Positions 15,701-18,700 of a stretch of 64,000 nucleotides of DNA are shown piece by piece (the first letter of the stretch is position 1; each line of letters begins with the position of its first letter). The DNA is from Octopus sinensis (taxonomy: Eukaryota). A model generated the notes under the pieces. The model was not told the origin of the DNA. It did not search any database and was given only the letters and a program-made list of their open reading frames with translations. The stretch lies in contig NC_042997.1 of the NCBI RefSeq assembly GCF_006345805.1, positions 107,694,001 through 107,758,000 on the forward strand, read 5' to 3'. The translations under genes were made by a program, and so were the position numbers.

Positions 15701-18700
15701 AAGGTGGGGGAAGCATCTACTGAATGATGCATGTAAAAAAAAATTCATAATCAAATGAAATTTTCTAAGAGAAAGAAAACAAGATTAGTGGTAATTGATA
15801 TTAAATTCCACAGAGGTGGGGAGATAATTTTATGAAATTAAGAATTAATCTCACAAAACTAATTTACATTCTCAGAGGAAATAATGTTTGATTATTTATC
15901 GGTAAAGGGGAACAACTTTAGATATGTTCCCGTCTAGTTGACATCATCTTTGCGAGCTAGTTTCACTCTTTATTCTAGCCACAAGAAGCCATCCTTTTCT
16001 TTCTGTTTGTTCCTCATCAATCCAAATAGTTTCCTTTCCCAGTCATAAATTTACACTTTCATTGTCCCAGGAATAATGAGTTGTCAGAAATTGAGAAGAC
16101 TAATTTGTCATTTCTCTTTACAAACAATATTATAATGAATGGTCTCCGTATTTCAGAACTTGCTGGTGTTGGTGTCATGTAAAAAGTACCCAATCCACTC
16201 TGCAAAGTGGTTGGCATTAGGAAGGGCATCTTAATTATTGCACTGCCTATTAACAAGTTTTAACTTGAGATATTCTCCACCTTAAAAAGCTCTAAAATTC
16301 GAGTTTAGAATATCTAAAACAAAAAGTATTTATACGACTTAACCCTGAGAAACTGATGTTACAAATGGAATAAATCTGATACTAGAAATAATTTGATCAA
16401 TTTTAGTGCCTTGGATTTAAAATATGGACAGACTGTGATTACTTACTTTGGCCCCTCTTTTCTTTTTTTATTTTTAGGACAAAGGAAAATTAATGGAAGG
16501 CTTAAAGCATGCTTCAAACATGCTGGGAGAGCTGAGGACATCTTTATTGTCTCCAAAGACCTATTATGAGCTCTGTATCCTTTTTAAATGCTTGTCACCT
16601 AATATTTATATATGTCTTACCTGTCCATAGAATAATGGGCTGTCATATTAAAAGCATTAATTTTTTTTGTTTAAACCGATTAATTCAGTGCTTAATACAT
16701 TTAATGTCAGTGTTTTTGTGAAATCTTTTTATGATACGACTCCAATCAGTAAAATGATGATAGAGGCATGGCTGTGTGGTGGTCCTACTGTGTGGCGCCT
16801 TGTACAACTGTTTTCCTCTATAGCCATGGATTTGGTTGGTGGAAACTGAAAGAAGCCTGTCGTGTGTGTGTGTGTTTGTTCCCCACCACCACTTGGCAAC
16901 TGCTGTTGGTGTGTTTACATCCCTGTAACCTAGCAGTTTGGCAAAAGACACTGATGGAATAAACACCAGGCTTTAAAAAAGCAAGTACTGGGGCTGATTT
17001 GTTTGATTAGAATTCTTGAAGGTAGAGCCCTAGCATGGCCGACTGAAACAAGTAAAAAGGGCAAAATAAAACTAATTGCTAAATATAATTATTTTTTGCT
17101 TTTTATCTTCTTTCTTATTAGAGAGAGAGAAGTTCTAAATGTTGCAATGCCTATAGTTGTGTTTTTCTTTAACTTTCCTCTGATATGGCCATCTCTGATG
17201 AATTGCGTCATTTGGAGCTCTATCTTGTAGAAGAGTTCCAGAAAGGTCGAAAAGTTGCTGACTTATATGAACTTGTACAATATGCTGGTAACATAGTGCC
17301 ACGTCTGTAAGTATTCTTTCCTTATTCTCTTTGTCTCGATTTCAAGGGATTTGTGTGCAAATGACTGGATTCTAGTTTTTCTTTCAAATGTTATTAGGGA
17401 CTCAAGACATTTGAACTGGCTGCTCCCCTAAATTTATACATTTTTTAGAACTTTTCCATTTGGCTGCTAATTTCAACTTCCGTTCACATTGATTTCATAT
17501 TCAGTGTAGTGATACACTTTTATAGGCTAATCAATGCCATGGAAATCACTTTTGCTATAAATCGATAAATAAAGAGTTATTAGCAATTAAAGTTTGAAAA
17601 TTTTTGGTAACTTTTGGCAATCGTAAGCCGCAGACACATGCATGCCTGTTTCCATAGTAACAAGCTGAATATGAGAGCTCTTTTGTTTGTGAGAAAACAC
17701 GTGTTGACAAATATATTGAAACCCCCTGTTCTACTGTTTTACCCACCTGGAAATTTTACTGTTCTGCCCGATTATGGCAGCAAGCTCCAGTAACCTCACA
17801 TCTATAATGGAGATCACATTCAATGTGTATTGAATACTTCAAACCACAAAAGACAAGTTGTTTACTCATTTTCCGCACATAGAATACAAATATTGACAAC
17901 ACGTGCTATTTTCAGGATGTTGACAAAATGTGCTGTCATGCAGAAAATGACAAGTTTCCAAATCCTGTTTCCTGACTGGGTAAAATTTGTCAAACTTAAC
18001 ATCTTTAACTTTTTAAAAAAATTTTTCTGGAAAAGTGAAATAACTCCAGCAATTCAACTTAGAAAAATTTTTTAATTTTCAATAAACTTTAATTCTTGAA
18101 ACCTTGGCAGCCAAATGGAAAAGATCCCATTTTTCAAATAATTCCCTGAAATGTATGAGCTTTTTTTTTTTTTTTTTGCCTTTATGTATTCTCTTACATT
18201 TGGTAATATTTGGATTGTACAAAAATTCTGTCAATGAGAAAAACATGTAAAACAGGTTTTTCATGATGGGTTTGATTCTTAGATGTACCTTGCTCCATTT
18301 ACTGCATGCTACCCTTGGAAAAGGAATGAATATCACAATACATATTTCCCATTGTCTTAAACACTTTACTCTTTCAAATCTAAGTGAAGAAGGCTTGTGT
18401 CACAGAGACATTTTGCTGGTTACTTCACAGAGGAAATGTTTTCTTAAAAAAAAAACAAAACTGAATAGAAGTTGATAAATTCGAAATCTTACCAACATTG
18501 CCTTTCTGGAACCTGTGCTGGTGGCATGTGTAAAAAGATTCGAGCGAGGTCGTTGCCAGTACTGCCTGACTGGCCCCTGTGCCAGTGGCATATAAAAAAC
18601 TACACTCTCGGAGTGGTTGGCGTTAGGAAGGCAACCAGCTGTAGAAACTCTGCCAAATCAAGATTGGAGCCTGGTGCAGCCATCTGGTTCGCCAGCACTC

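What the first reader, a model, noticed from the sequence alone, without database searches (positions are those of the whole stretch)
16575..17182. VPS35 intron 3: a minor-spliceosome intron that ends in TG instead of AG or AC
Seen: the donor is GTATCCTTTT. TTCTTTAAC sits at 17165-17173, and the only junction that restores the conserved YYEL-Y-MAISDEL frame is ...tttcctcTG|ATATGGCC. The nearest upstream AG would add 26 nt and shift the frame. Established: U12 introns are defined by (G/A)TATCCTT and a TTCCTTAAC-like branch site 10-20 nt from the 3' end, and they tolerate rare non-canonical termini. Inference: a true GT-TG U12 intron in an essential gene, possibly a rate-limiting splicing step that gene predictors would mis-model.
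Basis: partly seen in the sequence, partly recalled or inferred. Interest (0 to 1): 0.85.

Follow-up and report, generated by a model that had tools for sequence, protein, structure and literature searches.

The report
Octopus VPS35 minor intron ending TG
Intron 3 of the octopus retromer gene VPS35 is a real minor-spliceosome (U12-type) intron that ends in TG instead of AG, a rare but already catalogued variant that cephalopods have kept since octopuses and cuttlefish diverged and that breaks several automatic gene annotations.

Summary
The window holds a complete Octopus VPS35 gene (17 coding exons, + strand). Its reading frame stays open only if intron 3 is 16575-17182: GTATCCTTTT ... TTCTTTAAC + 9 nt ... 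TG|ATATGG. The other 14 introns checked are GT-AG.

- **Orthology:** the intron sits at exactly the codon position of the human VPS35 minor intron, which is GT-AG. Scallop and Lingula also have a U12-type GT-AG intron there.
- **Conservation:** five cephalopod assemblies lack the A. O. sinensis-like window, O. vulgaris, O. bimaculoides and Sepia pharaonis end in TG; Argonauta hians ends in CG. An assembly error is therefore excluded.
- **Transcripts:** nine cuttlefish RNA-seq contigs carry the exact junction. RefSeq octopus proteins contain YYELYMAISDEL.
- **Machinery:** the genome encodes U11, U12, U4atac and U6atac.
- **Annotation damage:** four non-RefSeq annotations truncate or split the gene at this intron.

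GT-TG, GT-CG and GT-GG minor introns are already catalogued, so this is a well-supported new member of a rare known class. No octopus transcript could be retrieved, and the "rate-limiting splicing" idea remains untested.

The parts
6733..44657 (+). VPS35 coding region. Exon 1 is the ATG at 6733-6735. Exons 2-17 run from 12762 to 44657, stop codon included.
   Evidence: tblastn mapping and splice model. The spliced product is identical to O. sinensis XP_029633737 minus its two cassette exons.
16478..16574 (+). Exon 3 (97 nt). It ends ...TATTATGAGCTCT; the last T is the first base of the Tyr codon (phase 1).
16575..17182 (+). Intron 3, 608 nt, U12-type with GT-TG termini.
16575..16584 (+). U12-type 5' splice site GTATCCTTTT, matching the consensus RTATCCTTT. 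Only 3 of 9 positions match the U1-type consensus CAG|GTAAGT.
   Evidence: The motif is identical in O. vulgaris, O. bimaculoides and Argonauta; it is GTATCCTT in Sepia, scallop and Lingula.
17165..17173 (+). Branch-site motif TTCTTTAAC, 8 of 9 matches to TTCCTTAAC. The C-to-T change would still pair with U12 as a G-U wobble. Nine nt follow the motif before the junction.
   Evidence: The U12 snRNA of this genome keeps GUAAGGAAAA.
17181..17182 (+). Non-canonical 3' terminal dinucleotide TG. It lies 10 nt after A17172 and 11 nt after A17171.
   Evidence: TG in O. vulgaris, O. bimaculoides and S. pharaonis; CG in Argonauta; AG in scallop, Lingula and human.
17183..17306 (+). Exon 4 (124 nt). It starts ATATGGCC, where AT completes the Tyr codon and MAISDEL follows.
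17155..17156 (+). Nearest upstream AG. It lies upstream of the branch motif; using it would add 26 nt and give a premature stop.
17216..17217 (+). Nearest downstream AG, 45 nt after the branch A. Using it would delete 35 nt and shift the frame.

Best explanation
Intron 3 of this Octopus VPS35 gene (16575-17182) is an ancient U12-type intron, orthologous to the human VPS35 minor intron. Its 3' terminal AG has become TG.

Proposed mechanism:
1. The U11/U12 di-snRNP binds the 5' splice site GTATCCTTT and the branch motif TTCTTTAAC. U6atac later replaces U11 at the 5' site.
2. After branching, the 3' cut is placed by distance, 10-11 nt downstream of the branch adenosine. The terminal G is retained and can still partner the intron's first G.
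3. The -2 position, normally A, tolerates a pyrimidine.
4. No AG or AC lies in the 10-20 nt window after the branch site, so nothing competes with the TG.

The A was lost before octopods and cuttlefish diverged. The position has since drifted between T and C (C in Argonauta) while the spacing and the final G were kept.

Shown here: the sequence anatomy, the orthology, the conservation, the cuttlefish mRNA junction, and the presence of the minor snRNAs. Inferred: dependence on the minor spliceosome in octopus, distance-based choice of the 3' site, and the G-G terminal interaction.
For: - **Frame:** the reading frame is intact only with this junction.
- **Human orthologue:** the human minor intron is at the same codon, GAACTTT|GTATCTTTTG...GTCCTTAAT-12nt-AG|ATATGG. 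Human and mouse VPS35 are mis-spliced on loss of U11, RNPC3 or CENATAC.
- **Outgroups:** scallop and Lingula have GTATCCTT...TTCCTTAAC/G, then 9-10 nt ending in AG, at the same site.
- **Cephalopods:** O. vulgaris, O. bimaculoides and S. pharaonis end in TG and Argonauta in CG. All have exactly 9 nt between the branch motif and the junction.
- **Conserved islands:** the intron interior is unalignable between Octopus and Argonauta (37% identity). The 5' splice site and the branch-to-3' block are conserved.
- **Transcripts:** nine Sepia RNA-seq contigs from nine runs all read GAACTTT|ATATGGCAATT. A scallop control behaves as expected for GT-AG.
- **RefSeq:** O. sinensis and O. bimaculoides proteins contain YYELYMAISDEL.
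- **snRNAs in this genome:** U12 126.6 bits, U11 94.5, U4atac 83.8 and U6atac 96.9, with conserved recognition boxes.
- **Known tolerance:** a branch-to-3'-site distance of 10-20 nt is the known U12 constraint. GT-TG and GT-CG minor introns are known.
Against: - No transcript from an Octopus species could be retrieved. For this genus the junction rests on RefSeq models, conservation and the reading frame.
- The Sepia contigs are only about 97% identical to S. pharaonis exons. Transcript and genome are therefore congeneric, not from the same species.
- There is no transcript evidence for Argonauta's CG.
- Dependence on the minor spliceosome was not tested in any cephalopod.
- The stretch between the branch motif and the junction is pyrimidine-rich in cephalopods, which is more typical of U2-type 3' ends.
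Confidence: 0.9

Rival explanations
1. Assembly or sequencing error: the true base at 17181 is A, and the intron is an ordinary GT-AG U12 intron.
For: A single-base error would be enough. AG is the state in scallop, Lingula and human.
Against: The same T is present in an independent O. vulgaris assembly, in O. bimaculoides and in Sepia pharaonis. Argonauta has C, not A. Five assemblies lacking the A cannot all be errors.
Confidence: 0.01
2. The intron has converted to a U2-type GT-TG intron and is removed by the major spliceosome, like the known U2-type GT-TG introns in GNAS, TSPYL2 and ARS2.
For: U2-type GT-TG introns exist. In cephalopods the 3' region TGTGTTTTTCTTTAACTTTCCTCTG is pyrimidine-rich, unlike in scallop, Lingula or human.
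Against: The 5' site GTATCCTTT is a perfect U12 match and matches only 3 of 9 positions of the U1-type consensus. It is invariant across cephalopods, whereas a converted intron would be free to drift towards GTRAGT. The TTCYTTRAY motif and its 9-nt spacing are conserved while the rest of the intron is not.
Confidence: 0.04
3. In Octopus the mRNA uses another in-frame acceptor (for example 17185 or 17179), or the TG junction is only a minor isoform.
For: No octopus transcript was obtained here. U12 3' site choice is flexible.
Against: Other in-frame acceptors delete or alter the conserved Tyr-Met. RefSeq models of two Octopus species, and transcripts of Sepia with the same local sequence, use the TG junction. 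The 9-nt spacing has been conserved since the common ancestor with bivalves.
Confidence: 0.04

Closest known systems
Human and mouse VPS35 minor (U12-type) intron, chr16:46681501-46682078 in human
   Same: Same gene, same codon (T|AT of the Tyr in YYEL-Y-MAIS) and same phase. It has a U12-type 5' splice site and branch motif and a similar length (578 vs 608 nt). It is listed and assayed as a minor-intron gene.
   Different: The human intron ends AAAAG (GT-AG), with 12 nt after the motif and a slightly degenerate 5' site, GTATCTTTT. The octopus intron ends CTCTG (GT-TG), with 9 nt after the motif and a perfect 5' site.
Catalogued U12-type GT-TG, GT-CG and GT-GG introns: human TEPSIN and GOLGA7, one mouse intron in SpliceRack, and the pan-eukaryote survey of Larue and Roy 2023
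   Same: Same class: a G-type minor intron with a non-A base at -2 and a retained terminal G. Among conserved animal minor introns, GT-TG is 0.039%, GT-CG 0.062% and GT-GG 0.216%.
   Different: This is a different gene. Here the non-A state is shown to be shared by octopods and a cuttlefish, with a T/C switch inside the clade. I found no paper describing this particular intron.
U2-type GT-TG introns (GNAS, TSPYL2, ARS2/SRRT)
   Same: Same terminal dinucleotides.
   Different: Those have strong U2-type 5' sites and polypyrimidine tracts. This one has the U12 5' site and branch motif.
AT-AN and GT-AT minor introns (variation of the last nucleotide)
   Same: Non-canonical 3' ends tolerated by the minor spliceosome.
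   Different: In those the last base varies and the -2 A is kept. Here the -2 base varies and the last G is kept.

Membership tests
U12-type (minor spliceosome) intron | 5' splice site |RTATCCTT(T), extended and nearly invariant | tested here: met
   GTATCCTTTT at 16575-16584. Conserved in all five cephalopod loci and in scallop and Lingula.
U12-type (minor spliceosome) intron | Branch-site motif TCCTTRAY-like, 10-20 nt from the 3' splice site | tested here: met
   TTCTTTAAC at 17165-17173 matches 8 of 9 positions. The branch A lies 10-11 nt from the junction. The constraint is quoted from PMC8199999.
U12-type (minor spliceosome) intron | Poor fit to the U2-type 5' site consensus | tested here: met
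   TCT|GTATCC matches CAG|GTAAGT only at +1 to +3 (read). No formal PWM or intronIC score was computed.
U12-type (minor spliceosome) intron | The organism has the minor spliceosome snRNAs | tested here: met
   U12 126.6 bits, U11 94.5, U4atac 83.8 and U6atac 96.9, all above the Rfam cut-offs in the window's genome. Recognition boxes were read.
U12-type (minor spliceosome) intron | Orthology to an established U12-type intron (positional conservation) | tested here: met
   Same codon and phase as the human VPS35 minor intron, and as the U12-type introns of scallop and Lingula.
U12-type (minor spliceosome) intron | Splicing depends on U11, U12, U4atac and U6atac | not testable with these tools
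   Shown only for the mammalian orthologue.
U12-type GT-TG subtype | The mRNA junction proves removal of an intron beginning GT and ending TG | tested here: inconclusive
   Met for the genus Sepia: nine RNA-seq contigs against the S. pharaonis genome. For Octopus there are only RefSeq protein models and the reading frame; no octopus transcript was retrieved.
Canonical GT-AG / AT-AC minor intron | 3' terminal dinucleotide AG or AC | tested here: not met
   TG at 17181-17182. The same or CG occurs in four other cephalopod assemblies.

The most novel reading that the evidence does not exclude
The coleoid lineage fixed a non-A base at -2 of this ancient minor intron over 200 million years ago (date from my own knowledge) and has kept it under selection. 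A weak 3' site on a minor intron would then act as a throttle on retromer (VPS35) output. Alternatively, it could be one symptom of a clade-wide relaxation of 3' site recognition by the cephalopod minor spliceosome (ZRSR2 side), in which case many cephalopod U12 introns would end in NG.
Probability: 0.1. Interest if true: 0.6.

Novelty: new member of a known kind. Interest (0 to 1): 0.35.

Why it matters
- **Biology:** this is a clean natural experiment on the minor spliceosome's 3' site. The terminal G and the 9-nt spacing from the branch motif were kept from bivalves to cephalopods, while the normally invariant -2 A was replaced by T and later by C. This supports choice of the 3' site by distance and terminal G.
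- **Annotation:** the intron breaks gene models. Four of six cephalopod VPS35 annotations seen here are truncated or split at it. The same failure probably affects other non-canonical minor introns in non-model genomes.
- **Gene context:** VPS35 is the core retromer subunit (a Parkinson's disease gene in humans, from my own knowledge), so correct models matter for cephalopod neurobiology.

Tried and rejected
- **Octopus transcripts, exact look-ups.** The O. sinensis RefSeq protein is not on record; records near the window's genome appear to be withheld. Five guessed isoforms of O. sinensis and O. bimaculoides are not in the collection either.
- **Octopus transcripts, fragment search.** A homology search with the 170-residue N-terminal fragment, meant to catch partial transcript ORFs, returned no cephalopod fragment; the best hit was 86% identical.
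- **Lottia as a molluscan outgroup.** Its VPS35 is intronless and therefore uninformative.
- **Motif statistics alone.** RTATCCTTT occurs 3 times against 2.0 expected in the window, so the motif count is not evidence. The two other hits, ATATCCTTT at 22669 and 44403, lie inside introns 6 and 16 and look like chance.
- **RNA editing creating an AG.** Rejected by reasoning: A-to-I editing needs an A at -2, and the base is T or C.
- **Shifted cut sites giving canonical termini with the same mRNA.** Impossible, because the flanking bases differ.
- **Tandem repeats in or around the intron.** Nothing relevant.
- **Not attempted.** A genome-wide survey of 3' termini of octopus minor introns; there is no annotation and no intronIC in this toolset.

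Full report
**1. What is in the window.**

A guide tblastn followed by manual splice modelling places a complete VPS35 gene on the + strand. Exon 1 is just the ATG at 6733-6735. Exons 2-17 span 12762-44657.

Joining the exons gives a 795-codon open frame. It is identical to O. sinensis RefSeq XP_029633737 once that protein's two cassette exons are removed. The proteins differ from O. bimaculoides at two residues and match O. sinensis and O. vulgaris.

The genome behind the window has 2.72 Gb in 13,516 contigs. The O. sinensis record is the one withheld from look-ups. The window is therefore most likely O. sinensis.

**2. The observation.**

- GTATCCTTTT at 16575-16584.
- TTCTTTAAC at 17165-17173.
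- The intron ends ...TTTCCTCTG at 17182, and exon 4 starts ATATGGCC.

Introns 2 and 4-16 (14 introns) were all read as GT-AG.

With the donor fixed at 16575, I scanned every possible acceptor from 17150 to 17224:
- Only 17182 restores ...TYYEL-Y-MAISDEL.
- The upstream AG (17155-17156) adds 26 nt and hits a stop.
- The next downstream AG (17216-17217) is 45 nt past the branch A and also shifts the frame.
- No AG or AC lies in the 10-20 nt window in which minor-intron 3' sites are used. That window comes from PMC8199999.

No alternative pair of cut sites yields the same mRNA, because the bases flanking the two cuts differ. The junction is therefore unambiguous once the mRNA is known.

**3. Orthology and ancestral state.**

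Human and mouse VPS35 is an established minor-intron gene. It is mis-spliced in U11-null mouse cortex and in minor-spliceosome disease patients (PMC8034651). It is also mis-spliced after RNPC3 knock-down (PMC12332006).

The CENATAC paper's supplementary tables give the human intron as chr16:46681501-46682078, U12, GT-AG. Its flanks are TATGAACTTT|GTATCTTTTG and ...GTCCTTAAT CATAATTAAAAG|ATATGG. That is the same codon and phase as the octopus intron.

| Taxon (locus) | 5' site | Branch motif + tail | Termini |
|---|---|---|---|
| Window (O. sinensis-like) | GTATCCTTT | TTCTTTAAC TTTCCTCTG | GT-TG |
| O. vulgaris (L013) | identical | identical | GT-TG |
| O. bimaculoides (L010) | GTATCCTTT | TTCTTTGAC TTTCCTTTG | GT-TG |
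| Sepia pharaonis (L012) | GTATCCTT | TTCTTTAAT CCTTCTTTG | GT-TG |
| Argonauta hians (L011) | GTATCCTTT | TTCCTTAAC TTTACTTCG | GT-CG |
| Argopecten irradians (L025) | GTATCCTT | TTCCTTAAC ATGAATCAG | GT-AG |
| Lingula anatina (L028) | GTATCCTT | TTCCTTAAG TATGTGACAG | GT-AG |
| Human | GTATCTTTT | GTCCTTAAT CATAATTAAAAG | GT-AG |

(Rows unless marked.)

GT-AG is therefore the ancestral state. The -2 A was lost in the lineage leading to coleoid cephalopods, and a later T-to-C change occurred in Argonauta. The nine-nucleotide spacing between motif and junction is the same in all the molluscs.

An assembly error at 17181 is excluded by five assemblies that all lack the A.

Between Octopus and Argonauta the intron interior is unalignable (37% identity). 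The 5' site and the branch-to-3' block stand out as conserved islands.

**4. Transcript evidence.**

Nine RNA-seq-derived contigs from nine different SRA runs encode a cuttlefish VPS35. All read ...CTACTATGAACTTT|ATATGGCAATTTCT. In the S. pharaonis genome this junction requires removal of a GT...TG intron.

These contigs are about 97% identical to S. pharaonis exons. They come from a congener rather than the same species, which is a caveat.

As a control, two scallop transcripts show the expected junction for that species' GT-AG intron.

For Octopus itself I could not retrieve a transcript. The RefSeq models of O. sinensis and O. bimaculoides both contain YYELYMAISDEL. Given the genome sequence, that can only come from the GT-TG junction.

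**5. Machinery.**

The window's genome has matches above the Rfam thresholds for all four minor snRNAs:
- U12: 126.6 bits.
- U6atac: 96.9 bits.
- U11: 94.5 bits.
- U4atac: 83.8 bits.

The recognition boxes are conserved:
- The best U12 copy begins AUGCCUUAAACUAAUGAGUAAGGAAAAUAACG and keeps the branch-site box GUAAGGAA.
- U6atac keeps AAGGAGAGA.
- U11 begins AAAAGGG.

The single deviation of the octopus branch motif from the consensus is a C-to-T change at position 4. It would still pair with U12 as a G-U wobble (inference).

**6. Mechanism.**

The best-supported reading is an ordinary minor-spliceosome reaction. The 3' cut is set by distance from the branch adenosine (10-11 nt here) and by a terminal G that can still partner the first G of the intron. 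The -2 base is tolerated as a pyrimidine.

The absence of any AG or AC in the permitted window removes competition for the TG. This fits published mutational and survey work showing that minor introns tolerate non-canonical 3' ends (Sheth 2006; de Wolf 2021).

Two parts of this are inferred and were not shown here: dependence on the minor spliceosome in octopus, and the structural role of the G-G pair.

**7. How new is it?**

GT-TG minor introns are already catalogued:
- One mouse case in SpliceRack.
- Human TEPSIN and GOLGA7.
- In the pan-eukaryote survey, which included O. sinensis, the shares of conserved animal minor introns are GT-TG 0.039% (29 introns), GT-CG 0.062% (46) and GT-GG 0.216% (159).

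RefSeq already models this junction. I found no paper describing this particular intron or its conservation in cephalopods.

It is therefore a new, well-documented member of a rare known class. Two modest points are of interest: the deep conservation of a non-A -2 base, and a T/C switch within the clade.

**8. Annotation consequence.**

- O. vulgaris CAI9715682 starts at MAISDEL, and the locus is split into a 69-residue model and a 747-residue model.
- Argonauta GAB1598202 starts at MAISDEL.
- Sepia pharaonis CAE1295744 has a spurious N-terminus that joins at LRHLELY.
- The older O. bimaculoides UniRef entries (747 and 755 residues) have the lengths of models that start at MAISDEL; their sequences were not fetched.

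**9. What remains open.**

- The claim of a 'rate-limiting step' is untested.
- The only hint, and it is anecdotal and biased by how the contigs were found, comes from two Sepia contigs (L001 and L008, the only ones inspected). Both still carry the 3' end of intron 1 upstream of exon 2 while intron 3 has been removed.
- Whether cephalopods have an excess of NG-ended minor introns was not examined.

Noticed in passing
window 20314-20373 and 40235-40258 (+): Two alternative cassette exons of VPS35, both with AG/GT flanks. The first is a 60-nt exon in intron 5 encoding [20 protein letters not shown]. The second is a 24-nt microexon in intron 15 encoding NSPKIFVK. Both are present in RefSeq isoforms of O. 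sinensis and O. bimaculoides. The first is also in all the cuttlefish transcripts seen, and both are in the Argonauta model.
   Followed up: partly
window 10516-10554 (+), inside intron 1: This is the alternative first coding exon ([13 protein letters not shown]) of O. sinensis RefSeq isoforms X1 and X2. The base after the last codon is A (GAG|ATCAGT), not GT. That model would therefore need a second non-canonical donor, or it is an annotation artefact.
   Followed up: no
window about 5267-6293 (-), against the VPS35 ATG at 6733: ORC6 lies head-to-head with VPS35 (Pfam ORC6 E=4e-10). The same neighbour is seen in O. bimaculoides, Argonauta and scallop. From memory, human ORC6 and VPS35 are also adjacent, which would make this an old microsynteny.
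   Followed up: partly
window 2189-3214 (-): An open frame with a reverse-transcriptase domain (RVT_1, E=6e-36). It is a retroelement fragment beyond ORC6. Observed only.
   Followed up: no
G000 genome-wide: U6atac has 43 matches above the Rfam threshold spread over many contigs. By contrast U12, U11 and U4atac have 1-5 matches above threshold. This suggests a multicopy family or retro-pseudogenes of U6atac in this octopus.
   Followed up: no
L024 (Lottia gigantea scaffold KB201977, 1001-3391): The Lottia VPS35 gene is a single uninterrupted 796-codon frame with no introns at all. It is probably a retrocopy that replaced or accompanies the parental gene.
   Followed up: no
L001 and L008 (Sepia RNA-seq contigs), just upstream of exon 2: Both contigs carry intron-like sequence (…tttctctttttcag) immediately before exon 2, so the 3' end of intron 1 is retained or an internal start is used. 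Intron 3 is cleanly removed in both. The gene caller then started the ORF at a TTG.
   Followed up: no
window 34079-34084 (+): Intron 11 has a weak donor, CAG|GTCACA. It is the only clearly sub-consensus U2-type donor in the gene.
   Followed up: no
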